Numbered from the stretch's first letter, positions 1 through 13,380 are shown. The stretch: DNA of 64,000 nt from Setoptus koraiensis (GCA_048013815.1 CM106586.1:22320001-22384000); one strand, 5' to 3'. Program-made: numbers and translations. The notes: generated by a model not told the origin, from the sequence alone.

Positions 1-1906
1 CGCATCATCACCATCAGCATGCTCATCAACATCAGCATTCAACGTCGCAGCAGGCACCACCAGCAACCTCTACACAAACTCCGACATCTTCGACACAAAC
101 TCCCACACCAGCGACAGCCACAACCACAACACAAGTGATAGCAACGTCAGCTAACAATCCGCCAATATCCACCTGTCACGCCGAAACAATCAAGACAGCA
201 GTCACAGCAACACCAAATGTGGCATCTAGCCTAAACGTAACTAATACGTCTAATTCTCAGCAGCAACGATCTCTTTCGCCGGCTTCCAATGCGACGCTCG
301 ATAGACAATTGTCTGAAACTGAAAAACAACCCACACATACTAGCAACAAAGAGAGCTTCTTACAACAGACAGCCAAAAGATTGTCTATAGGGCACCATTC
401 GATTGGAGGCAGAAAATCCATTGATAGCAACATGGGTGGTGTGCACCAGCAACGTCAAAGGATAAAATCGGCTGCTTTCGTCAGTACAGACATGGATGTG
501 AGCGACGAAACAAAATTTAATCGTCAACATACTCTGAAAACGTATGAAAGTTGTGATAGCCCCAGGATTAGACAAAGTGACCAAAACATCGATAACCACC
601 ACCATCATCACCATCATCTTAATGCGACCTCAACAAAGTCATTATCTGGCGCTACCACTTGCAAACAATGTAACCCGAGTAGCATTGAACCGTCAACAAT
701 CATAGAACCTAGGAGAGATAGTGTGTCACATTGTCGTCAACGCGCAACTTTAACATCGGCCTCGTCAACTACCCAGCAAGACGGATCAATGAGTCAATCT
801 AGCGAAAGTGAATCTGGTGATCCTGGGGCCGATAGTCTAATGCAATCGAATCCAGAGCAAAGCAAATCTACGCAACAAAATAAAGCATCTTCAAATGTGA
901 TAAACACTAAAAATTCAAGCTCCACTCGCATCACTACGAGCACACAACAACAGAATATAGGAAACTTAGAGAAGGAATTAGAGTCGCTAAAAATTAGATT
1001 AGATCGTAGGATAGGTGGCGTAAAAATGTCCAAAGTAACGCAATCCTATCTGAGTTATTTCCAACAATGGGCTGAATATGACCCTTTTATCACCACACCC
1101 ATTCCGTCCAATCCTTGGGTGACTGATTCAACTGAGCTTTGGGACTCTGAGAGGCAAACCAAAGATGTTCATTGTAGACGTATTAGACGATGGGCCTTTT
1201 CCTTGAAAGAGCTCCTCAATGATCCAGCCGGCAGAGACCAATTTTTCAGATTTTTAGAAAAGGAGTTCTCAGCAGAGAATTTAAAGTGAGTCTAAGTTGG
1301 TGTTTATGAGTGTCTATATAATTTCTTTTTGATTCAATGCTAACAGTCGCTATTGCGATATCGGTGAAATTGTTTTTGTGCATTATATATTGATTCGTAT
1401 AATTTATTTCTGTGTTCACTCATGTGCAAAAATTAGGTTCTGGGATGCAGTTCAAGAGTTGAAACGAGTTCACTCGAGGGATGTGGCAAGGAGAATCGAG
1501 GCTATATGGAATGAATATCTTGCAACTGGTAAGTTGAATTATACAGATTATTGTAATTGCGGCATCTATAAAATTAATCGCTCACATTCTAATAATATGT
1601 TCGACAATTTTTGGCTCTTCTTCCACATCGGTTCTTGTAGATGCGAACTGCCCTATCAATATTGATTCGAAATCGTATGAAACTTCAAAGAAGAATATGG
1701 AAAAGAATCGCAACAATCGCTATATTTTCGACGAAGCAGCCGGACATGTCTATCAGCTTATGAAAAATGATAGTTATCCACGTTATCTAAGATCTGACAT
1801 GTACAAAGACTACAAGGAAGCCTCCGAGAAAAAGAGAACAAATCAAGTTGCATTCGATGTTTTTAAGCCACAAATTACTACTCTCAAGCATAAATTCAAC
1901 TTTTAG
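1..1906 (+). CDS. RGS7: R7-family regulator of G-protein signalling (RGS6/7/egl-10-like), 5'-partial; exons <1-1285, 1437-1528, 1641-1906
   Basis: GGL domain (LEKELESLKIRLDRR...EYDPFITTPIPSNPWVTDSTELW) followed by the RGS box (FSLKELLNDPAGRDQFFRFLEKEFSAENLK|FWDAVQELK...G|DANCPINIDSKSYE...HVYQLMKNDSYPRYLRS). GT-AG introns 1286-1436 and 1529-1640 keep the frame. The frame is open from base 3, so DEP/DHEX lie outside the window. Confidence 0.92.
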
Positions 1907-2774: not shown

Positions 2775-5047
2775 TCATTCATAGGCAGAGGGTGATTCCT
2801 CCAAAACGATTTGATTTTCTGTTTCGTCAATATTCATTTTGACTCGAATATGTTCCATTTGTTCATCAGACGTTAAAAGCCTCGAGAAGCAAGATAAAAA
2901 AGGCGGTAGGGTTTCCATTAATGTTGGATGTGAGTGCGTCAACATCGGCTTGATAAAGTTATTGTCGAGATCTCGCCACCTCCTTACTAGGCTTGCGTTT
3001 TCGTAAGGACGAAGCTCCTCCATTCCTATCCCCAAAATTCTTAAAGAATCATGATGATTGTTTGAGGTGCTGTGCTCTGATAGCGCTAATTGTGAATCGT
3101 GGTGATTATTAGAGGCACTTTGCTCTGAAAGTGCCGAGCAGGAATCATAAATGCAATTTTTATTGTGTTCATGGTGACTATCAATTAAATTAGCTTCCCT
3201 TTTTCTGTTTCTTTGAATATCTAGCGAATCTGGATCCTTCGATTCCCTAATATGACTATCGGTACCTTTATCCGCGAAAGGTATCTTCAAAGCTTTCAGC
3301 ATGAAATCTACACTACCGCCAACTACTATAACACTAAATATTACTATCACAGATGTGGTACTAAGCATGATACGTCTTGCATCACCGACCGTATTTCTCG
3401 CAGCCAACGAATAAGATATAACTCCTCTGGCTGCTCCTCCCCATGCGATGACGTGCTGAAAATTGCATGGTATCTTCTTTTTTCTGCCTAAATTCAATAG
3501 GATACTTAGCGGGTATATACTTAGAGCTCTAGCCACTATAACCGCCACGAAAGCGATGCCGATGAAAGTTAGGTTCCAGGTTTGCCCCCTTTGCCAGAAT
3601 GCCACTCCAACTGCTAAAAATAAAAAGTTCTCACATAAGAATGTCAACAATTCAAACAATGTTATAGTTCTTTCACGGGCCTCTGCTGAGAAGTTGTTGA
3701 ATGTATAATGAGCTTGCGTGATACCACAAAATAGGATAGCCACTATTCCCGACATATCGCTAACTTCGGCTGCCAAGAATGACGTGTATGAGGTGAGGAC
3801 CACCAGACTTGTTTCCAGCAACGGTAAATCAGATAACTTTGTAAATTTTGTTGTCAATGCCGTAATGACTCCAAATATTATACCAATAATACATGAATTT
3901 ACAAACATAGATATGAAATTGAACGTTGATTTCCACAAGGCTAACATGATCGAGTAAGAGGGATTCCGACCATATATTATGCTAAACTGGTCGATTGCGT
4001 GAGTGAGAACAATTGATACGGCATCGTTGAGAATACTTTCACCAAAGACTAGGGCAAAGAGATTGACATCCACTTTTAGTTCCTGAAAGATAGCCAAGAC
4101 GGCTAGTGGGTCCGTGGGGGATATGATCGCACCAAAGTATAAACAATTTGACAGTGAGAAATTGTCCGCAAGATAGGTATATTGCAAGAAAGATCTCAAA
4201 AATTGAATTGCTCCGTAAATGATAGATCCTACAACAATCACAGAGATGGATGTGCCCACAAATGCATACGCTAATATTGCACCGATATTCCTAAAGAATT
4301 GTTTTCTTTTAAGAGATAGGCCAGCGTTGAGTACTATGGGAGGCAATATTAAATTGAAGAACACTTCTGGATCGACAGAGGCATAAGAGATTTGAGAGCC
4401 CAGCTTGGTTGATGGCGACAGTTCGCCTCTGAACTCATATGCATAGGTGTGATTCAAAGGTACATTCGGCACATCGCCTAGATTTCGCATCTCAACTATG
4501 ATGTAATCGGGCGGTCCATTTGGTGATGGGGTCTCAAGCCGCGAGTCTTCTGAGCTTATTTTCACTTCCAGGCCTATGTAGCGAATAGCGGCGCCCATGA
4601 TGAGGCCATAGATGATGGCCAAGCCGGTTTCGTGTATAAAATGGCGTCGTCTTCTTTTGAAGAACCATATTGTGATCAAGACCTGTGTGTGAGGTGAATT
4701 CGAAAAAAAGATTGTGTCAGTGTGATTGGAATTAATGGATATTGTTTATTACATTGAACAAAATGGTATTGATTAGTTGTGTAATGGGCGATTGTGAATA
4801 AGAAGAGTTAATTACGTACCAAAACCAAAAGAACAGCGTAGGCCAAAAGATTGAGAGTGTCTATACGATGTCGTTGTTTGGCCTTTTCATCCACAATAAC
4901 ATCCACAGGTAAATAGGCATGACCATATGTTGCAAATTGGACGAGTAAAGCGACAAGATAAGTTATTCGTAACATGATTGGTGGTGGGAAGGTGCACAAC
5001 GTCGTAGTGAGCCCTCTCTGTATTATTGATGGATATATTATTGCCAT
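2775..5047 (-). CDS. Nhe3: Endosomal Na+/H+ exchanger (SLC9A6/7/9, Drosophila Nhe3-like); exons 5047(or 4975)-4820 and 4682-2775
   Basis: Motifs HETGLAIIYG, DPEVFFNLILPPI, PTDPLAVLAIF, VFGESILNDAV. A phase-0 intron (ttg|gtacgt ... cacag|gtc) joins DEKAKQRHRIDTLNLLAYAVLLVL to VLITIWFFK. The start codon (5047 or 4975) is uncertain. Confidence 0.93.
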
Positions 5048-7236
5048 CGAGGTGTTTGTGCGTTTGTTTTTTGTTGTTTCTGTTATGTTTTTGTTGTTTC
5101 GTGGGTCTCTCAGAACAAATGCTCCAATGAAGGTGAGAGCGAATGCTCTAGAACAGGCGTCACAGTAGGCTCGCTAGCACTAACAACTAATTTTAGTATA
5201 TTTATATATAGGATTTGCTGTAACATGTTATCTTCTCTAGAGGTTGTTAATCGTCATGTTGCGGGTGAATGACAAACAATTATCACTGATTGCTAATGTT
5301 GTTGTTTCTTTGATCACAGCTCCTGTCTAATAATAATCTGGATAACTAATTGTTGTTATTGTTCATTTATTTAGCTGTACCACACATGCGAACATTAAAA
5401 CATGGACACAATTAGACACACAAACAATAATAATGGTATGTCACATATAATAATTGGGCCTGTATTGCGACAATTTTTGTTGCAAGTTTCTCTGCTCGGC
5501 GCGCCACCACAAAATCCGCAACACGAATAATCCGCTCTGTTTTGTGCACTGACTGTGTGTTCATGTCACTGTACTGTATATATTTAGAGGTTAGACAGTT
5601 CAGAGCATGCTCACAACTACCGCATGTCAGCTCTACTGCACTTTCGTTGCTTTCACTTTCACTTGCGCACTATGCACAATGTGAGCTGTTGTGTGTACAA
5701 TTGCGTATGCTCGAACCGCTCTGTGACAAGGCAAAATAAACGCAAGGGTGCATTGTTCTCCCTGAATTCAAGTACAGTGAAAACTCCTGAAACTCGTACG
5801 AAATTTAAATAAGTAAACAAGTCACCTGTGCTATCGAATGGCATCGCATGTCGTTGTTAACAAGTTGTGGTTAATAATCACGAGTTGCAAAACGTCGCCA
5901 GACAATTACAATATACACAAATCACACACAAATCAAAACAAGGGCAGTAAATTATGCAGACAACGCAAATCCAATATTTAGGGTACGTCATGGTGGCTGA
6001 TTAGAGCGCATACTAATCTCTCGGATAGTCATATTAAAAAATACCTAATGATGGCGATGACTCACGCCGTGAACGCAATGTCTCATCATTACCAACACGT
6101 CGGCAATTTGTGTGCTCCGCAACATCTACGCAGGGATCTATTATTGTTGCTTTTATTCAATGAAACAAGTCATCTGTCTGTGGGAATAACTTTTTGAATA
6201 TTAACACTACTAATTTTCCAATCAAATACGAATACACAGTCCGGATAAATCACAACATCGATCCGGTCTTATCTATCGACATCTATTGCTCGCAACGTTG
6301 TACGAGTCTCACATGAAACTGTGCCAATCTATTCATCATGTCGGCGAGAGTATCAGGCTGCGTTGGAATAGTTTCCCTGAAATGATAAGTACCAGGAATG
6401 TGGTCAAACCCAGCACCAGGAACAACGAGTATCTCCCAGCAGTGTCATAACATGCAGAGTCAGGCTTCTGATTGGCCTTCTCGGCTGCCTCTTTGGCACT
6501 CGGCGGCAAAACTATCTTCGGGGCAAGTGCGTACATGGCTCTGCCGGCCTTATATTCTAGAGCTGCTAATACCCTTTGCCGTTCTTTCTCAAACAGCTCG
6601 TGGGAAGGTTGACCTTTGTTTGGCGGATTTACAGCATGGCTCATTGTTACCTGTCCAAGTACAGACACAGTCTAGCGGGCAATAACTTACATAATATGGC
6701 ATTTACGTCAGGTGTAAAGTTGTCAAGTTTGCCATATGCTTCACGTAGACCACACTCTCCCATGTTGCTGGCACTCACCATGGATACTAGTTTATTAGAG
6801 GCCCCATCTCACAAATAACCTTTGAATGAATTGTGCTGAGCACCCTCCACCCATACATTTTGCTGGTGGACTTCATCTGCATTGATCATCAGGTTATGTG
6901 ATTGAGCGATTGGTCTATTTCTGTCTGGTCCTCATTTCGGTTACTACGGATTGCGACCTTAACATCAGTTTGAAATTTCGAGCCGAAAATTCGACACCTC
7001 CTTTCTACTATTTGAACAATTGGAAGTATCAACCTCGACAGCTCGGGGGCCATGAAGGCCTGAAGGAAGAAGTTTGAAAGATTTCAAGCGAATCTATCCA
7101 AGACAAACAGAGCTCTTTTTGAAAGTTCACGGTTCATGATGAAATGTTTATTTAGAGTATTTGAATAGTAGTTTTTTATCTCTTCAGACATCGATACAAA
7201 ATCTTGCAACAACAAAAAAGATGAACCTTAACTTAC

Positions 7237-8259
7237 CGATCGTTAACCTTGCCATATCTGACTAGTTTTTTAGGATTTTTCACAAACTGGATTGAAACTT
7301 GCCTTACTTACCTTGAATATCTACCTTGATAATCTTCTTGAGATCGGGTTCTACTTTGTTGGAGGCAACACACTCGTAAAGACCGGAATTCTGCGGTGTA
7401 GCATCATTAATCGATAACATTCCATCGACATCCTTCAAATTGACTGTATCATTGATATTACTATTCAACTTTATCCACCTCACCATTGGTTGTGGCTGTC
7501 CTCTGGCCGAGCAGTTCATTTTTGCTGTTTGCCCAACGGCAATCTTTATGTCTTGAGGTTCCACTAGCCACTTCAGTTCCACTTTTTTCGTGATATTGAA
7601 AAGTTTAATAGTAGCATCGAGTAGTATCAATATACAAAAAAGAGTAATGAAAGTGAATAATCGTTAAACCATCATGATCCATTCAACGAAGATATCCTGT
7701 GAATCCAATTTGTTATCTACACATACCAGCGACCATTAAACTTGCGGAGACACTGTCGTGGCCATGAGAGTTTTCAACTCGACAGGTGTAATTTCCGGTA
7801 TTCTCTACAGTTATGTTGGTCATTTTCAGTCTCGATAAGCCTTGCTCGAACTTTATTGTATATTGTCGTCCATAATAATTGTCCAGCCTGCTCCCATCTT
7901 TGAACCAGTAAAAATTCAGATCTTGACTATTCTTCCCATTGGAAACAACACAAAACATTTCCGTGTCGGATCCCTCGCTGTAGCTATCCTCTAATGGCAT
8001 AGGAAGTAGCTTTGGAGCAGCTAAAATTTTAGTAAATAAAGATGTGATTAATTTATTATGTTGGAGCGAATTATGTCGAACTATGATACCTCAATGATTG
8101 TCCCAAATGTGGTGCTGCTGACCAATTTATCCTCCACTTACTTGATTTCAATTTAGAGTTGGTATTGGCGGCACTTGCATCTGATGATAATGTCAGACTT
8201 TCCAAGGTGATGAGTAGAATCAGCAACCATATTGGTTGTTGTTTCCACGAGCTTGACAT
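7237..8259 (-). CDS. Dscam: Shortened Dscam (sDscam-beta-like) variable cassette B: leader 8259-8142, Ig7-like 8020-7727, Ig8-like 7581-7312, microexon 7257-7237
   Basis: Signal peptide MSSSWKQQPIWLLILLITLESLTLS. The Ig exons (APKLLPMP...MFCVVSNG...W...YTCRVENSHG; WLVEPQD...NCSARGQPQPMVRW...SGLYECVASN) resemble Dscam Ig7/Ig8. All introns are phase-1 GT-AG and the frame is intact. The Ig8 acceptor (gaaaaaag) is weak. Confidence 0.85.
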
Positions 8260-8507
8260 GTCTATAAAATATAATGATTTGGTGACGAGATACAGTAAAT
8301 ACGAAGAAATCCGAGTGTTTGTCTATTTTGCAGGTCATATAGATTGGTTAACTAAATCTTTCTGTAGATTGAAATATTCTCAAACAGGATGAGAACCAAC
8401 TCATATCGGTTTGTTTTCTTTTTTCAATCGTTTGCCCATCGATCAGCTGTAATGCGACAAAATTCCTGTCGGATAAATCGAGCTGCGGCGCCTAGCACCG
8501 CTGCGCA

Positions 8508-9520
8508 CATTTGGGGTCTCAAAAAGAATTGCATTTGGTAGCACACACGAAGCTTTGTCTCGGCTTCGTGAGTGAGAANNNNNNNNNNNNNNNNNNNNNN
8601 NNNNNNNNNNNNNNNNNNNNNNNNNNNNNNNNNNNNNNNNNNNNNNNNNNNNNNNNNNNNNNNNNNNNNNNNNNNNNNNNNNNNNNNNNNNNNNNNNNNN
8701 NNNNNNNNNNNNNNNNNNNNNNNNNNNNNNNNNNNNNNNNNNNNNNNNNNNNNNNNNNNNNNNNNNNNNNNNNNNNNNNNNNNNNNNNNNNNNNNNNNNN
8801 NNNNNNNNNNNNNNNNNNNNNNNNNNNNNNNNNNNNNNNNNNNNNNNNNNNNNNNNNNNNNNNNNNNNNNNNNNNNNNNNNNNNNNNNNNNNNNNNNNNN
8901 NNNNNNNNNNNNNNNNNNNNNNNNNNNNNNNNNNNNNNNNNNNNNNNNNNNNNNNNNNNNNNNNNNNNNNNNNNNNNNNNNNNNNNNNNNNNNNNNNNNN
9001 NNNNNNNNNNNNNNNNNNNNNNNNNNNNNNNNNNNNNNNNNNNNNNNNNNNNNNNNNNNNNNNNNNNNNNNNNNNNNNATCTCCGTCGTCGCTCCCGCGA
9101 CGACTGCGTGCGACGGAAACCCTTCGGGTAGAGTTGATGAGCGCTTCGGGTATCGGGCTGCGCCCTCTACCCTCCGCTCACATGACTGCAATCCATCCAC
9201 AAATGAAGGGGGGGAATAAAAAATAAGGATGAGACAAGTAGGAACAACTGAATTACAAGCTAATACATGGTGTTGCGCAGTCTGTGCACAGTATGGGCCC
9301 GCTTACCGCAACCGCACAGGCCTGGCCGCACCTCTAATTTCAGTTGAACCTTGACATCTAGCAAACCGGAAGTGATACCGGATTGATTTTGATTTCATCG
9401 TGCTCCGCTGAAAGTCATCTACCTGATTCTCAATTTTCAGAGCTCTAGCTTCAACTTTATGTAAAACCGGAACCAGAAGTTTCCGCACTTCCGGACCACC
9501 TAATCCATGATGTGGGGCGC
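8508..9520. mobile_element. Partial second copy of the dead-ORF flank plus a related MITE lacking the right TIR
   Basis: 8508-8578 is identical to 10571-10641 (71 bp). 9079-9190 is similar to 10996-11108. ~9445-9497 matches the subterminal repeat at 11374-11430. No copy of the terminal TIR follows. Confidence 0.7.
8579..9078. other. Assembly gap (500 N)
   Basis: Run of N. Both flanks match the 10571-11108 region, where the equivalent interval is only ~355 bp. Confidence 1.
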
Positions 9521-9543
9521 CGATGTATCACACACATTGTAAG

Positions 9544-9713
9544 GCGCGCACTCGCCGCGCTATGGCCATGCATGGTGTCATAAACACCATGCAGCACGGC
9601 CAGGCGCGACAAGTGCGCGCCACAGGCTAAAGACATGTAAATGGGCAATCTGCTGAGGTCAGCAGATTGCCCCTATAAATAAAGCCACGGCTGATCGATG
9701 AAGATCAGTCGTG
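9544..9713. other. Cluster of three inverted repeats around a TATAAATAAA motif
   Basis: 77-nt imperfect GC-rich fold-back at 9544-9620. Perfect 14-bp stem GGGCAATCTGCTGA-gg-TCAGCAGATTGCCC at 9643-9672. TATAAATA at 9674-9681. 11-bp stem at 9686-9713. Confidence 0.85.
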
Positions 9714-9755
9714 ATCTGACCAACCTTAAGAGAACATCTCTAAATAGATCAGCCC

Positions 9756-10644
9756 TTACTTGAGCATGTTATCAGTGAATTGGATTACTTTATGATTTCC
9801 GCTATCTAAACCAACTTGCATTGTTTCTATAGTATCCCTGATCGTATTTGCCCACCACCTAGACTGACCGTCGGGTACCTGGTTCTTGATCTCGTTCACA
9901 GAAGCTCCGCAGAACAATGAGAGGATTTCCTCGAATTTCTCATACATGAGTTCCACTGCCTTGTGAAACACAGCGTCGCCTTGCCAGCCGTCTGATGGCC
10001 TGCTGGCGAGGATGGCTGCACCAAACTCCTATATTTCTTCGACTAGAACGTCCATGTCTTCGTTTCTCTGACAAGCCACATAGGGCGGCAAAAGATGTGC
10101 ATTTTTCACACCAACATAATCAGTTGTATACCTTTTTCTCTTGTTGCTTTGCGTAGGTTCATGAAAACCGCCTGGTCCTGGTGTAGCCGCCGCATCTCGT
10201 TCGGGAATTCCTTGATCGTTCTCCTCCGTTACACGATGATCCTCGTCCATGACGGGTTGAGGACCAGCTGATCCTTGTTGTGTCTCCGCATCTTGGATGC
10301 GAAGTCCTTGATTGTTCACCTCCGTTACACCATGATCCCCGTTCATGACGGGTTGAGGACCACCTGATCCTTGTGCAGTCGGCGCATCTTGGATGCGAAC
10401 CTCTGCAGTTGGCTCAATTATTGGCTCTTGTGTCAGCTTTACTTCTTGCGGAAGGACTGATTCTCGCGCGGAATCCTTCTGAGGACTGAGCTTCCAGGTG
10501 ATGCAAGGACTTGGTGGTACCTGATTTTCGAGGACAATTACTGCAGGGACGAGATCTGATTTTTCCTGCCCATTTGGGGTCTCAAAAAGAATTGCATTTG
10601 GTAGCACACACGAAGCTTTGTCTCGGCTTCGTGAGTGAGAAATC
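9756..10644 (-). pseudogene. Disrupted ORF of unknown origin (~300 codons), split by one TAG and cut by the MITE
   Basis: Listed ORFs 10029-10670 and 9756-9971 are in the same frame (EEI*EFGAAILASRPSDGWQGDAVFHKAV). Removing the MITE and one TSD continues the frame leftwards on the minus strand into 11525-11680, which has further stops. Confidence 0.6.
10170..10400 (-). repeat. 96-bp (32-aa) coding tandem repeat, two copies plus a partial third
   Basis: IQDAPTAQGSGGPQPVMNGDHGVTEVNNQGLR / IQDAETQQGSAGPQPVMDEDHRVTEENDQGIP / ERDAAATPGPGG. The anchor gcatcttggatgcgaa occurs at 10288 and 10384. Confidence 0.85.
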
Positions 10645-11516
10645 GGTTGTTGTAGCGAATAGTGCCACACTCAGATTCTGATGAAACTTTCGGTATAGGT
10701 TTATATTGACCTCAATAGAACGAAAAAAGTGGTCCGGAAGTGCGGAAACTTCCGGTTCTGGTTTTACCTCAAGTTAGAGCTAGAGGTCTGAAAATCACCA
10801 TACTAGCCTTCCGAAAGACGCTGAATACAATGGCATAATTTTCAGCTCGGTGCGACTTCCGGTTCTCGAGATATCGGCATATTTATTGGTTTGGAAGACC
10901 GGAAGTTGACGAATTTCAGCTTCGCTGCACTCGGGGATGAACCTGCGATGGGTCTGAGAACTCGGCCTGCGGCCTCGTAATTTGGAGGCCGTCACATCTC
11001 CGTCGTCGCTCCCGCGACGACTGCGTGCGACGGGAACCCTTCGGGTAGGGTTGATGAGCGCTTCGGGTTTCGGGCTTCGCCCTCAGCCCTCCGCTCACAT
11101 GACTGCAAACCATAGACGAGAGTAAGAGACTAGAAGAAATGTTAAAAGCCTCGGAACATGATTCAAGCACAGATCTAGCGCTGTGCCATCTTGTGTGGCG
11201 ACATATCGGAGCCTCTAGGGCGCACGTATTTACTCGTGCGCGCGGATGCTTCGTCCCGAGCGGGATACCCGCGCGGTTTTTCCTGAATATCTCCGCAACC
11301 GGAAGCCGCACACACGTAAAACGAACTCCATTGTACTCAGAATGTTCATATCCTGCTGCATATCAAGTTCCATAGCTCTAGCTTGAATTTTGTGTAAAAC
11401 CGGAACCGGAAGTTTCCGCACTTCCGGACCAGCGAATCCGTTGTTTGGGGGCCCTAAGGGCCCCATGTGTGAAGTTTGGTGGAAATCTGAGTGTGGCACT
11501 ATTCGCTACAACACCC
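10645..11516. mobile_element. Non-autonomous TIR element (MITE, Mutator- or Merlin-like), 872 bp
   Basis: 33-bp TIR GG(T/G)TGTTGTAGCGAATAGTGCCACACTCAGATT at 10645-10677 and 11484-11516 (inner 30 bp perfect). 8-bp TSD GAGAAATC at 10637-10644 and 11517-11524. Inner inverted repeat at ~10730-10785 / ~11374-11430. No transposase. The superfamily is inferred only from GG termini and TSD length. Confidence 0.88.
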
Positions 11517-12197
11517 GAGAAATCAATGAAAGGAAGTGGAAATCCACTCCTTAGTGTTCTTCGCGATTCAGCACATTTTCAGCACTATACCAATAGTTTT
11601 TCATTTCGCCTTTGTTTGTCGGCTTCACCATGTCGTTCTAGGACGATTCTTCCTGAGATATCATCCGAAATCTCATCCATTTTGCAAAAAAAAAAGTGCA
11701 CGAAACATGAAGCCACACACTCTTTCTGCTGGTGAATTGAGATATGACTCAAGAATGAGAAACATGCAGTGAGATGATTTTCTGGTTAGAACCTTTCCAG
11801 TATTCTGAAGACGAACAGAAATGATCCTAGACTTGTGAGTAAATCCCAAGTATTAGATTAATCTACATCGCGACATGAGATATACCCAACATTCTTGTCA
11901 AACAACTGTGATTTCCTACGAAAATTGTGAATATCCCTGTATCTTCTAGACACTTAGCTCATCTAGGCTGATTTTGTGAGGGTCCAGAAGTAATCATTTG
12001 TTCTGTGAATCGGTTGCATCTCAACAAAGAATCATTCATAGGTGAATAAAAAGTTAAATCTTATACTCCATCGGACAAGTGAACTGTGTTTCTCTATAAG
12101 TCTGCAGTTTCGGTTGAAATCTTTATTTAAAAAAAGCATGTACACAGAAAGAAATCTAAAACCTTACAATTTATCAAAGTGATCACCCGTTACTTAC

Positions 12198-13380
12198 CGA
12201 AGGTTAACTTTGCCATGCATTCTGACCAGTTTTTAGGATACTTCAATTAGTGACTTCGTAAACTGACACTCTACTTACCTTGAATATCTACCTTGATAAT
12301 CTTCTTGAGATCGGGTTCTACTTTGTTGGAGGCAACACACTCGTAAAGACCGGAATTATGCGGTGTAGCATCATTAATCGTTAACATTCCATCGACATCC
12401 TTCAAATTGACTGTATCATTGATGTTACTATTCAACTTTATCCACCTCACCATTGGATGTGGCTGACCCTTAGCCGAGCAGTTCATTTTTGCTGTTTGCC
12501 CAACGGCAATCTTTATGTCTTGAGGTTCCACTAGCCACTTTAGTTCGGCTATATAAATCATCGATAGGATGATATTGGATATTTAATAATAAGTTGATAT
12601 GTAATCAATTGAAACTAAGTAGTAATCAAAAATTATATATTCCATCAGTCCCACCACGTCCATCAACGAGGTACGAATAGTAATATCATAGTTGAGTTAA
12701 TTAGTAAGCAAGGATACTTACCTACAACCACTAAACTTGCAGAGACACTGTCGTGACCATATGAGTTTTCCACTCGACAAGTGTATTTACCTGCGTTAAC
12801 AACAGTGATATTGGTTACCTGCAATATTGAGTGGCCTTGCTCAAACTTGATAGTATGTTGTCCCCCGTAATTGGTGTCCAATTTGTGACCATCTTTTGAC
12901 CAGTTAAATCTAAGATCATGAATGTTCTTTCCATTGGACACAATGCAAAACATTTCGGCGCTTGATCCCTCACTGTAGCTATCATCGAGCGCCATGGGAA
13001 GTAACTTTGGGATACCTGCAAAAGAAGAATATTATTGATCATTGTAAGAATATGGGTAGACAATTCATGATGCAACAAGCATGTTGAAGCAAGTTGACGC
13101 AGACAATGAAATCTCGATGATCTCTCATATATTTAATGGGTACTCGGTAGATGCGTTCATGTGTGATTTTTGTTGTTTGCTCGTCCATACAAAATATGTG
13201 AGAATGTAATTTCGGGATAATATTTTGACGAGTAATCCAATTGATCTGTGCCTACTTACTTGATTTGAGTTTACTGTTAGAATTTGCGCCATTTGCCTCT
13301 GCCGACAATGTATAAACTTCCATGATAAATAGAAACAACAACCAGCCTGATCGTTGTCGTGGCTTGTTGGCCGTATCCAT
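12198..13380 (-). CDS. Dscam: Shortened Dscam (sDscam-beta-like) variable cassette A: leader 13380-13260, Ig7-like 13015-12722, Ig8-like 12548-12279, microexon 12221-12198
   Basis: Leader MDTANKPRQRSGWLLFLFIMEVYTLSAEANG...KLKS. The Ig exons have the same lengths (294 and 270 nt) as cassette B. Canonical phase-1 GT-AG introns; frame intact. Confidence 0.87.

What the first reader, a model, noticed from the sequence alone, without database searches (positions are those of the whole stretch)
7237..13380. Two intact sDscam-beta-like variable cassettes with no constant region in reach
Seen: two complete minus-strand cassettes (own signal-peptide exon, Ig7-like exon, Ig8-like exon, microexon), each ending in an open GT donor. 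In the 7.2 kb downstream there are only the NHE gene (same strand) and the RGS gene (opposite strand); no Ig9/FNIII/TM Dscam exons are visible. Established: chelicerate sDscams use tandem 5' cassettes spliced to a shared constant region, and trans-splicing between sDscam-beta loci is known in the spider mite Tetranychus urticae. Inference: these are either cassettes that splice across two unrelated nested genes, orphan cassettes that trans-splice, or secreted two-Ig isoforms.
Basis: partly seen in the sequence, partly recalled or inferred. Interest (0 to 1): 0.75.

Follow-up and report, generated by a model that had tools for sequence, protein, structure and literature searches.

The report
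Stand-alone short-Dscam cassettes, remote constant exon
Two intact gene pieces encoding the variable front half of a mite nerve-cell recognition receptor (short Dscam) lie 4.6 million bases from the matching back half. Each carries a short RNA tag complementary to a conserved tag beside that back half, so the full message is probably stitched together from separate transcripts.

Summary
The two minus-strand cassettes are real, intact and under purifying selection (dN/dS 0.10-0.27). Each has a signal exon and two I-set Ig exons that match Ig1 and Ig2 of full-length chelicerate sDscams (Dscam Ig7/Ig8). No constant region is in reach: the NHE gene starts about 550 nt downstream. The genome (very probably the eriophyoid Setoptus koraiensis) has two clear sDscam constant exons (Ig3 + 3 FN3 + TM + tail), both megabases from all ~12 dispersed cassettes.

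The "microexon" is probably not an exon. In about 55 sDscams Ig2 joins Ig3 directly, and the Ig2 donor plus the remote phase-1 acceptor gives that canonical junction. The microexon sequence is instead complementary to a block upstream of the constant exon at C2:17.695 Mb, whose core is conserved in six species.

- Cassette tails complement that block (Fisher P about 7e-7).
- Relatives' tails complement their own version of it (1e-4) but not this genome's (0.39).
- Ig1-intron controls are negative (0.67).

This matches the docking/selector system of Tetranychus sDscam-beta trans-splicing, but here the loci are unlinked. Trans-splicing is inferred, not shown, because no transcript data exist. 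A secreted two-Ig product remains a rival. The scan's agents reached a similar reading at the C2:7.52 Mb constant exon.

The parts
13260..13380 (-). Cassette A exon 1: start codon plus signal peptide (MDTANKPRQRSGWLLFLFIMEVYTLSAEA...), phase-1 donor
   Evidence: hydrophobic core seen directly. No signal-peptide predictor was available.
12722..13015 (-). Cassette A Ig1 exon (294 nt, I-set; equivalent to Dscam Ig7 / sDscam Ig1)
   Evidence: dN/dS 0.10-0.27
12279..12548 (-). Cassette A Ig2 exon (270 nt, I-set; equivalent to Dscam Ig8 / sDscam Ig2). It ends ...KVDIQ + G, followed by donor GTAAGT at 12278.
12184..12228 (-). Cassette A putative selector sequence. It lies 52-96 nt past the Ig2 donor and is complementary to the docking block upstream of constant exon 1.
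   Evidence: dG -37.5 kcal/mol, z -3.0; rank 1 of 36 windows
12122..12127 (-). AATAAA conserved in cassettes A, B and C: candidate poly(A) signal ending the cassette transcript
8142..8259 (-). Cassette B exon 1: start codon plus signal peptide (MSSSWKQQPIWLLILLITLESLTLSSDA...), phase-1 donor
7727..8020 (-). Cassette B Ig1 exon (294 nt, I-set), 73% identical to A at the protein level
7312..7581 (-). Cassette B Ig2 exon (270 nt, I-set), 95.5% identical to A. Donor GTAAGT at 7311.
7221..7264 (-). Cassette B putative selector sequence.
   Evidence: gapped score 48, above all shuffles; p = 0.0025; dG -43.0 kcal/mol, z -5.0; rank 1 of 36
7147..7152 (-). AATAAA: candidate poly(A) signal of cassette B
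8579..9078 (.). Scaffolding gap (500 N) inside a repeat copy between the two cassettes, not in an exon
   Evidence: PMC11920263 (3D-DNA scaffolding)
2775..6668 (-). Unrelated Na+/H+ exchanger gene immediately downstream of cassette B (main exon 2775-4679; first coding exon about 6336-6668). It bounds the cassette.
135..1665 (+). Unrelated GGL+RGS (R7-type RGS) gene on the opposite strand

Best explanation
Each cassette is a self-contained 5' half-gene of a shortened Dscam (sDscam-beta type). It has its own start codon and signal exon, an Ig1 exon, and an Ig2 exon that ends in a very strong phase-1 5' splice site. Fifty to 100 nt further on lies a selector sequence, followed by a poly(A) signal.

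The matching 3' half is a single 1.9-kb 'headless' exon encoding Ig3, three FN3 domains, a TM helix and a cytoplasmic tail. It lies at C2:17,693,132-17,695,044 on the same strand, 4.63 Mb away. I found no Ig cassette near it.

Proposed mechanism:
- The cassette pre-mRNA and the constant-exon pre-mRNA are transcribed separately.
- The selector pairs with a docking block 340-410 nt upstream of the constant exon's acceptor. The core of that block is conserved across species.
- The spliceosome joins the Ig2 donor to that acceptor in trans, giving the canonical ...KVDIQ-V-VPARFNEKF... junction of a full sDscam.
- The same would apply to the ~10 other cassettes scattered over both chromosomes.

Shown:
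- the anatomy and the homology;
- purifying selection on the cassette exons;
- absence of a cis partner among all sequences searched;
- phase and junction compatibility;
- the conserved docking block;
- statistically supported, species-matched complementarity.

Inferred: separate transcription, the pairing in vivo, and the trans-splicing event itself.
For: - Identity: the Ig1 and Ig2 exons align with Dscam1 Ig7 and Ig8 and with Ig1 and Ig2 of full-length chelicerate sDscams. The constant exon aligns over 100% of its length with 745-800-aa sDscams of mites, spiders, ticks and horseshoe crabs, and is 58% identical to an Aceria tosichella Dscam-like protein.
- Junction: in about 55 sDscams Ig2 abuts VPA[RK]F.EKF with only the split codon between them. 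Here the donor G plus the acceptor TA-GTA-CCA... reproduces this.
- Donor: G|GTAAG follows Ig2 in 10 of 10 units that are only 40-47% identical to A, and in 3 of 3 relatives. Ig1 donors of the same units vary, with GTAAG in 2 of 10.
- No cis partner: searches with FN3, I-set, the constant exon and an Ig2 profile place every cassette megabases from every constant exon. In five related species the 10 kb upstream of the orthologous constant exon holds housekeeping genes and no Ig exon. Relatives' cassette loci have no constant exon within 4 kb.
- Docking block: its core is conserved in six species while the flanking intron is unalignable.
- Complementarity of cassette tails to that block: Fisher P = 6.7e-7 in this genome and 1.3e-4 in relatives; relatives' tails against this genome's block, 0.39. 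Duplex z-scores run from -1.7 to -6.2 for all ten tails. The docking windows give the best mean dG of 36 windows in the intron without being the GC-richest. There is no comparable site in the other constant exon's intron. The Ig1-intron control gives P = 0.67.
- Function: dN/dS is 0.10-0.27.
- Precedent: docking/selector-assisted sDscam-beta trans-splicing in T. urticae, with selectors 43 +/- 10 nt past the donor (PMC9258826).
Against: - No transcript evidence of any kind was available. No RNA-seq exists for this species.
- The pairing statistics are partly post hoc. The 3' limit of the docking block in this genome was drawn after I had seen the complementarity.
- An unbiased k-mer convergence test was not significant (P = 0.34 and 0.06).
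- With ungapped scoring only one cassette (F2) was individually significant.
- Two relatives' duplex z-scores were weak (-1.1).
- Every cassette has a poly(A) hexamer within 200 nt of the donor, and an in-frame stop soon after it (directly after G-K in five of the ten units here, including A and B). A stand-alone secreted product is therefore plausible.
- I could read only 1.5 kb upstream of the constant exon myself. The '39 kb without 5' exons' is an unchecked first-reader note.
- About 6% of the original assembly is unanchored and was not searchable.
Confidence: 0.6

Rival explanations
1. Stand-alone genes for small secreted two-Ig proteins. On this reading the transcript is not spliced after Ig2, or it uses the 'microexon' as the start of a terminal exon. 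It terminates at an in-frame stop (...DIQGK* or ...ECMAKLTFGK*) and is polyadenylated at the conserved AATAAA. The cassettes would then have become independent of any constant region.
For: - In-frame stops follow the donor within 1-15 codons in all ten units.
- An AATAAA/ATTAAA lies within 200 nt in 13 of 13 cassettes (joint null about 4e-7).
- TAAATAAA is invariant in A, B and C.
- Each unit has its own signal exon.
- No constant exon lies in cis.
Against: - GGTAAG is invariant at the nucleotide level in units whose synonymous sites are saturated, which fits a splice site and not a Gly-Lys codon pair.
- The constant exons are 'headless' and would have no source of a signal peptide or of Ig1-Ig2.
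- The tails complement the conserved block next to the constant exon.
- A short transcript ending at a nearby poly(A) site is also what a trans-splicing donor transcript would look like.
Confidence: 0.22
2. The microexon is a real coding exon. Either it adds a 7-8-residue linker between Ig2 and Ig3, or it is the last variable exon carrying the open donor.
For: - AG and GT flanks, an open frame and a 3-nt indel are conserved in A, B and C (ECMAKLTF / DMARLTI / EHKARLPI).
- It is also phase 1, so inclusion would stay in frame with the constant exon.
Against: - None of about 55 full-length sDscams has a linker at this junction.
- No counterpart was seen in the printed 135-140 nt after the Ig2 donor of the seven more distant units, though I made no systematic search for one.
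- An open 21-24-nt frame and an in-frame indel are weak evidence.
- The same bases, including the 'donor' GGTAAGT, are explained by complementarity to the docking sequence ...ACTTGATTACCTGATCGGTTAACCTGCCAGATTCTGACT.
Confidence: 0.1
3. Ordinary cis-spliced sDscam gene whose constant region is missing or misplaced through assembly or scaffolding error, or an extremely long (4.6 Mb) cis intron.
For: - A 500-N contig joint sits between A and B.
- About 6% of the original assembly is unanchored and BUSCO completeness is 89% (PMC11920263).
- Constant exon 1 is on the same strand and lies downstream.
Against: - The sequence from cassette B through NHE and RGS is contiguous, with no gap.
- All seven cassette loci lack a constant exon, and both constant exons lack cassettes.
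- The same separation is seen on independent contigs of five or more related species.
- Cassettes on the other chromosome cannot splice in cis.
- I judge a 4.6-Mb intron, nearly a tenth of a 49-Mb genome, implausible; I did not count the genes inside it.
Confidence: 0.05
4. Decaying orphan cassettes (pseudogenes) left behind after translocation.
For: They have no partner in cis. Degenerate Ig2 fragments with stops do exist elsewhere, at C1:23.16 Mb.
Against: - All exons are open, with intact splice sites and start codons.
- dN/dS is 0.10-0.27 at dS up to 1.7.
Confidence: 0.03

Closest known systems
Tetranychus urticae sDscam-beta1-4 locus: alternative promoters plus cis- and trans-splicing guided by docking-site/selector RNA pairing (Hou et al. 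2022, PMC9258826)
   Same: - Multi-exon 5' cassettes encode a signal peptide plus Ig1-Ig2.
- The constant region is one large exon.
- A selector lies a few tens of nt past the last variable donor and a docking site lies in the intron upstream of the constant exon.
- One constant exon there (beta4) has no variable region of its own.
   Different: - In T. urticae all clusters sit in one locus. Each of beta1-3 has a constant exon in cis, so trans-splicing is an addition to cis-splicing.
- Here no cassette has a constant exon in cis. Cassettes are in groups of 1-3 at seven or more loci on both chromosomes, megabases from the two constant exons, so trans-splicing would be obligatory.
- Cassettes here have three exons, not four.
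- Joining is demonstrated experimentally in T. urticae and only inferred here.
Drosophila mod(mdg4) and lola trans-splicing
   Same: A gene split into independently transcribed units joined by spliceosomal trans-splicing of ordinary splice sites. For mod(mdg4), intron motifs and pairing have been implicated (PMC13490949, abstract only).
   Different: - There, common 5' exons are joined to many alternative 3' exons within one locus (some on the opposite strand).
- Here, many alternative 5' units would be joined to a common 3' exon across megabases and chromosomes.
- This comparison rests partly on my own knowledge.
Canonical chelicerate sDscam-alpha/beta clusters and vertebrate clustered protocadherins (Yue et al. 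2016, PMC4835542; Cao et al. 2018, PMC5775551)
   Same: Variable N-terminal Ig units, each with its own first exon, share a constant region, and a phase-compatible single junction joins them.
   Different: Those are tandem arrays directly upstream of the constant exons and are cis-spliced. That linkage is absent here.
Drosophila Dscam1 exon 6 docking site / selector sequences
   Same: One conserved docking element competes for pairing with many divergent selector elements, each overlapping a different part of the docking site.
   Different: In Dscam1 the pairing is intramolecular and governs mutually exclusive cis-splicing of internal exons. This comparison is from my own knowledge and from PMC9258826's discussion.

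Membership tests
Chelicerate shortened Dscam, beta type (sDscam-beta) | Variable unit encodes two Ig domains homologous to Dscam1 Ig7-Ig8 (sDscam Ig1-Ig2) | tested here: met
   I-set in all four exons. Alignment to 3dmk residues 618-709 and 716-809. The best match is always Ig1 or Ig2, respectively, of full-length sDscams.
Chelicerate shortened Dscam, beta type (sDscam-beta) | Each variable unit has its own first exon (start codon, signal peptide) and hence its own promoter | tested here: met
   ATG plus a hydrophobic leader exon with a phase-1 donor sits ahead of each Ig1 exon. Promoter activity itself is not testable here.
Chelicerate shortened Dscam, beta type (sDscam-beta) | Constant region of Ig3 + 3 FN3 + TM + cytoplasmic tail exists and is phase-compatible | tested here: met
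   A 644-aa open frame at C2:17.69 Mb has a phase-1 acceptor and aligns over 100% of its length to sDscams. The junction reproduces the family consensus.
Chelicerate shortened Dscam, beta type (sDscam-beta) | Variable cassettes arrayed in tandem directly 5' of the shared constant exons in one locus | tested here: not met
   The nearest constant exon on the same strand is 4.63 Mb away. All cassette loci and both constant exons are unlinked. The same holds on contigs of related species.
Docking-site/selector-guided sDscam splicing (T. urticae type) | Conserved docking element in the intron upstream of the constant exon | tested here: met
   A block of about 40 nt is nearly invariant in five relatives, with its core (GACCAAC..GCTGACCAACTTGA) shared by this genome, 160-410 nt upstream of the acceptor. 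The flanks are unalignable.
Docking-site/selector-guided sDscam splicing (T. urticae type) | Selector complementary to the docking site shortly downstream of the last variable donor | tested here: met
   - Fisher P = 6.7e-7 (this genome), 1.3e-4 (relatives), cross-species control 0.39.
- Duplex z -1.7 to -6.2.
- Docking windows give the best mean dG of 36.
- Ig1-intron control 0.67.
- Caveats: the k-mer convergence test was not significant and the block limits are partly post hoc.
Docking-site/selector-guided sDscam splicing (T. urticae type) | Chimeric mRNA joining cassette and constant exon; dependence on pairing shown by compensatory mutations | not testable with these tools
   There are no transcript data and no experiments.
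Secreted two-Ig IgSF proteins (e.g. Dpr-like) | Complete ORF ending in a terminal exon with stop and poly(A) signal, and best homology to a two-Ig family | tested here: inconclusive
   A stop and an AATAAA are present after the donor. However, the homology is to sDscam Ig1-Ig2, and the Ig2 end is an invariant consensus donor.

The most novel reading that the evidence does not exclude
In eriophyoid mites the whole clustered sDscam system has been taken apart. About a dozen promoter-bearing Ig1-Ig2 'head' genes are scattered over both chromosomes, and one or two 'headless' constant exons are joined to them only at the RNA level. This would be obligatory intergenic and even interchromosomal trans-splicing, guided by a conserved docking site and cassette-specific selectors. 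It would be the first neuronal recognition receptor family known to be encoded entirely in unlinked pieces.
Probability: 0.5. Interest if true: 0.88.

Novelty: new variant of a known kind. Interest (0 to 1): 0.74.

Why it matters
Trans-splicing of protein-coding genes in animals is rare. In the one sDscam case known (T. urticae) it occurs between neighbouring clusters that can also splice in cis. If this reading is right, it would have several consequences:
- A cell-recognition receptor repertoire could be maintained with its variable and constant halves fully unlinked, for as long as the lineages sampled here have been separate.
- RNA-RNA pairing alone would have to bring transcripts from different chromosomes together.
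- Gene annotation in these tiny genomes (5,954 genes reported) would systematically miss such receptors, calling 'headless' and 'tailless' fragments instead.

It would also give a compact natural system for studying how specific trans-splicing partners are chosen: short introns and a docking region of about 60-70 nt (conserved core about 40 nt).

Tried and rejected
- The fetch from genomes: my first call asked for 20-kb pieces that were cut to 10 kb, so they did not adjoin the window. I could not read the 10 kb directly left of the window or more than 1.5 kb upstream of the constant exons. I relied on whole-genome searches instead.
- RNAduplex on 150 x 1500 nt gave sprawling, meaningless structures. 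An earlier version was killed.
- Ungapped complementarity scoring: only cassette F2 was individually significant, and 3 of 10 best sites fell in the docking region.
- Window-free k-mer convergence test: not significant, and it peaked on an AT-rich stretch. I therefore do not claim that all cassettes converge on one spot by that measure.
- Brix/Ldh synteny as a bound on the constant exon's upstream space: it holds in five relatives but not in this genome, where Brix is on C1.
- Constant exon 2 (C2:7.52 Mb): its 1.5-kb upstream intron shows no docking core and no standout window. Its database orthologues are too distant (35-40% identity) for an intron-conservation test.
- Aceria protein P0036 starts at an internal Met in Ig3 and says nothing about the 5' partner.
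- The big representative-protein search was not used, because giant multi-Ig proteins would swamp a single-Ig query.
Exons were searched one by one by reference, so no search or fold of a joined cassette-constant protein was made.
- Nothing in the window or the loci looked human.

Full report
WHAT IS THERE

On the minus strand the window holds two homologous three-exon units.
- Cassette A: exon 1 at 13380-13260 (ATG and a hydrophobic leader), an Ig exon at 13015-12722 and an Ig exon at 12548-12279.
- Cassette B: exon 1 at 8259-8142 and Ig exons at 8020-7727 and 7581-7312.
- Every junction is phase 1 with AG/GT sites.
- All four Ig exons are I-set domains.
- The Ig1 exons are 73% identical and the Ig2 exons 95.5%.
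- No other copy is in the window.

The 500-N run at 8579-9078 lies between the cassettes inside a repeat. Its two flanks are colinear with one intact copy of the same repeat 2 kb away, where 354 nt separate the matching points. The assembly was scaffolded with 3D-DNA (PMC11920263), so the run is a contig joint. Continuity is likely but unproven, and no reading frame depends on it.

Downstream of cassette B there is only a Na+/H+ exchanger gene on the same strand. Its first coding exon begins about 550 nt below the last conserved cassette element. Beyond it a GGL+RGS gene lies on the other strand.

WHAT THE CASSETTES ARE

Searched exon by exon against solved structures, the Ig1 exon aligns end to end with Drosophila Dscam1 residues 618-709 (Ig7) and the Ig2 exon with 716-809 (Ig8). 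Both also match the single-domain Dscam entries.

The assembly (48.76 Mb, two sequences) fits the published eriophyoid Setoptus koraiensis genome, which has two chromosomes and an N50 of 24.53 Mb. Contig C2 is 24,533,333 bp.

A whole-genome FN3 scan showed a 644-aa open frame at C2:17.69 Mb on the minus strand. It encodes an Ig domain, three FN3 domains, a TM helix and a cytoplasmic tail in a single exon behind a phase-1 acceptor.
- Its nearest named relative is an Aceria tosichella Dscam-like protein (58% identity).
- It aligns over its full length with 745-800-aa sDscams of dust mites, oribatids, spiders, ticks and horseshoe crabs.
- Against those full-length proteins, the window's Ig1 exon always hits the first Ig (residues about 25-125) and the Ig2 exon the second (about 120-220).

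The exons are under purifying selection, with dN/dS 0.10-0.27 for all pairs among A, B and a third close copy C at C2:6.65 Mb. They are not pseudogenes.

NO CONSTANT REGION IN CIS, HERE OR ANYWHERE

Searching the genome with the constant exon finds one clear paralogue at C2:7.52 Mb (minus strand) and two distant ones at C2:2.88 Mb and C1:5.95 Mb.

An Ig2 profile census, with all candidates scored, finds:
- ten strong cassette units at seven loci: C2:22.33 Mb (two), C2:6.65 Mb, C2:11.17 Mb (three), C1:0.58 Mb, C1:6.12 Mb and C1:21.59 Mb (two);
- two units with a split Ig2 exon at C1:14.64 Mb;
- one inside a larger ORF at C1:9.95 Mb;
- degenerate fragments at C1:23.16 Mb.

None is near a constant exon. 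Cassette B's donor is 4.63 Mb from the acceptor of constant exon 1.

This is not peculiar to one assembly. On contigs of five related species the orthologous constant exon sits between Brix/Ldh and PAP2 genes, with no Ig exon in the 10 kb upstream. Cassettes from the same metagenomes lie on other contigs, with no constant exon within 4 kb.

Limits:
- I could read only 1.5 kb upstream of the constant exons in this genome.
- About 6% of the original assembly is unanchored.
- An unchecked first-reader note reports no 5' exons for 39 kb upstream of constant exon 1.

THE MICROEXON IS PROBABLY NOT AN EXON

In about 55 full-length sDscams the last strand of Ig2 runs directly into VPA[RK]F.EKF of Ig3, with only the split codon between them. 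Here the Ig2 donor (…KVDIQ + G) joined to the constant acceptor (TA GTA CCA GCC AGA TTC…) gives KVDIQ-V-VPARFNEKF, exactly that junction. Including the 24/21-nt segment would insert ECMAKLTF or DMARLTI, for which there is no precedent.

The segment is conserved in A, B and C with its AG/GT flanks and an in-frame indel. I saw no counterpart in the 135-140 nt printed after the Ig2 donor of the seven more distant units. By contrast, all ten units end Ig2 with an invariant G|GTAAG, although they share only 40-47% protein identity with A and synonymous sites are saturated. The Ig1 donors of the same units vary freely, with GTAAG in 2 of 10. The Ig2 donor is therefore the conserved, unusually strong open donor.

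A DOCKING SITE AND SELECTORS

In T. urticae, sDscam-beta cis- and trans-splicing depend on a docking site upstream of each constant exon. That site pairs with selector sequences 43 +/- 10 nt past the last variable donor (PMC9258826).

Here the 1.5-kb introns upstream of the constant exon in six species share the phase-1 acceptor (YAG|TA GTN CCA GCC) and one conserved block.
- In five relatives the block is AACCAACTTGACCGATGGCTGACCAACTTGAAACTCTTAAYCT, nearly invariant amid unalignable flanks.
- This genome keeps the core GACCAACT…GCTGACCAACTTGA, followed by its own extension TTACCTGATCGGTTAACCTGCCAGATTCTGACT.
- The block lies 160-410 nt upstream of the acceptor.

The reverse complement of this genome's version reads …AGTCAGAATCTGGCAGGTTAACCGATCAGGTAATCAAGTTGGTCAGC…. 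The so-called microexon regions read:
- B: AGTCAGATATGGCAAGGTTAACGATCGGTAAGT
- A: GGTCAGAATGCATGGCAAAGTTAACCTTCGGTAAGT
- C: AGTCAGAACATAAGGCGAGGTTACCGATCGGTAAGT

Distant cassettes match adjoining parts of the same block: F2 over 27 nt, F3 an exact 11-mer, E2 an exact 10-mer and E1 an exact 9-mer.

Tests of complementarity between the first 130 nt after the Ig2 donor and the block, using dinucleotide shuffles:

| Test | Result |
|---|---|
| This genome's tails vs this genome's block (8 lineages) | Fisher P = 6.7e-7 |
| Three relatives' tails vs relatives' block | 1.3e-4 |
| Relatives' tails vs this genome's block | 0.39 |
| This genome's tails vs relatives' block (shares the core) | 0.001 |
| Ig1-intron tails of the same ten units (negative control) | 0.67 |

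Further results:
- The relatives' selectors use the segment GCCATCGGT, which complements a part of the block found only in the relatives.
- Predicted duplexes are more stable than shuffles for all ten tails: z from -1.7 to -6.2, with A -37.5, B -43.0 and F2 -54.7 kcal/mol.
- Among 36 windows tiling the intron, the docking windows give the best mean energy without being the GC-richest. They rank first for A, B, C, E1 and F2.
- The intron of constant exon 2 has no such window.

Weaker or negative results:
- A window-free k-mer convergence test was not significant.
- Ungapped scoring supports only F2 individually.
- The 3' limit of this genome's block was set after I had seen the matches.

I take the pairing as well supported but not proven.

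HOW IT MOST LIKELY WORKS

Each cassette is an independent 5' transcription unit: its own start and signal exon, a strong terminal donor, a selector, and then a poly(A) hexamer. All 13 cassettes examined have that hexamer within 200 nt of the donor (joint null about 4e-7). The constant exon is a separate 3' unit with docking site, branch-point-like CACTAAC, a weak, interrupted pyrimidine-rich stretch and acceptor. Pairing would bring the two RNAs together and the spliceosome would join them in trans.

For cassettes A and B the partner suggested by pairing is constant exon 1 at C2:17.695 Mb; for B, -43.0 against -27.4 kcal/mol for constant exon 2's intron. Cassettes on the other chromosome (E1, E2, G) also rank the same docking window first or second, which would need interchromosomal joining.

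The divergence pattern is Ig1 73% identical at dS 1.7, against Ig2 homogenised at dS 0.10. This fits Ig1 being the specificity domain, as shown for T. urticae (PMC9258826).

Unspliced transcripts would end …DIQGK* and could yield a secreted two-Ig by-product or an alternative product. I cannot exclude that this is the main product (rival, 0.22).

COMPARISON AND NOVELTY

The parts are those of the T. urticae sDscam-beta system. One defining family feature, cassettes arrayed directly 5' of their constant exon, was tested and is not met. In T. urticae trans-splicing supplements cis-splicing within a single locus. Here it would be the only way to make a receptor.

I found no paper on Dscam organisation in eriophyoids. 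Within this scan, a follow-up agent working on the C2:7.52 Mb constant exon reached the same 'headless exon, probably trans-spliced' reading, and first readers flagged constant exon 1 and another cassette cluster. Those notes are not independent evidence.

I rate this a new variant of a known kind, of high interest if transcripts confirm it. The claim is directly testable with one RT-PCR.

PROCEDURE NOTE

The spliced model was never joined. All searches used single exons by reference.

Noticed in passing
window 7312-7581 and 12279-12548 versus 7727-8020 and 12722-13015: Between cassettes A and B the Ig2 exons have dS 0.10 but the Ig1 exons dS 1.67. This indicates recent gene conversion confined to Ig2. 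A's Ig1 is closer to the cassette at C2:6.65 Mb (dS 0.38) than to its neighbour B, so the cassettes are mosaics exchanged over 15.7 Mb.
   Followed up: partly
window 8505-9196 and 10568-11113; ORF 10029-10670 (-): A repeat family fills the space between the cassettes, with two copies, one of them broken by the 500-N joint. It contains short palindromic 'TCCGGAAGTGCGGAAACTTCCGG' motifs. A nearby 213-aa ORF has no Pfam match.
   Followed up: no
G000 C2:17695384-17695455 (docking block, outside the window) and window 12198-12190 / 7237-7229: This genome's docking sequence contains TTACCTG, which from memory resembles the 5' end of U1 snRNA. Its complement is the GGTAAGT that made the selector look like an exon with a donor. 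Whether this mimicry has a role is unknown.
   Followed up: no
L065, L067, L068, L069, L070 (related species) versus G000 C1:5847329-5848150: Ldh(-), Brix(+), constant exon(+), PAP2(+) synteny holds across the five related species (each locus showing the part its contig covers). In this genome Brix lies on the other chromosome from constant exon 1, so the constant exon has moved in one lineage.
   Followed up: partly
G000 C1:23158964-23159125 and C1:23172708-23172821: Partial Ig2-like fragments, one with two in-frame stops. They look like decayed cassette remnants, in contrast with the intact units.
   Followed up: no
window 135-1665 (+): The 'RGS' gene has a GGL domain followed by an RGS domain split by an intron, i.e. 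an R7-type RGS.
   Followed up: partly
G000 C1:14643857-14648409 (+): Two further tandem cassettes have an Ig2 domain split into two exons (matches to profile positions 1-45 and 40-94), unlike the single-exon Ig2 of the other ten units.
   Followed up: no
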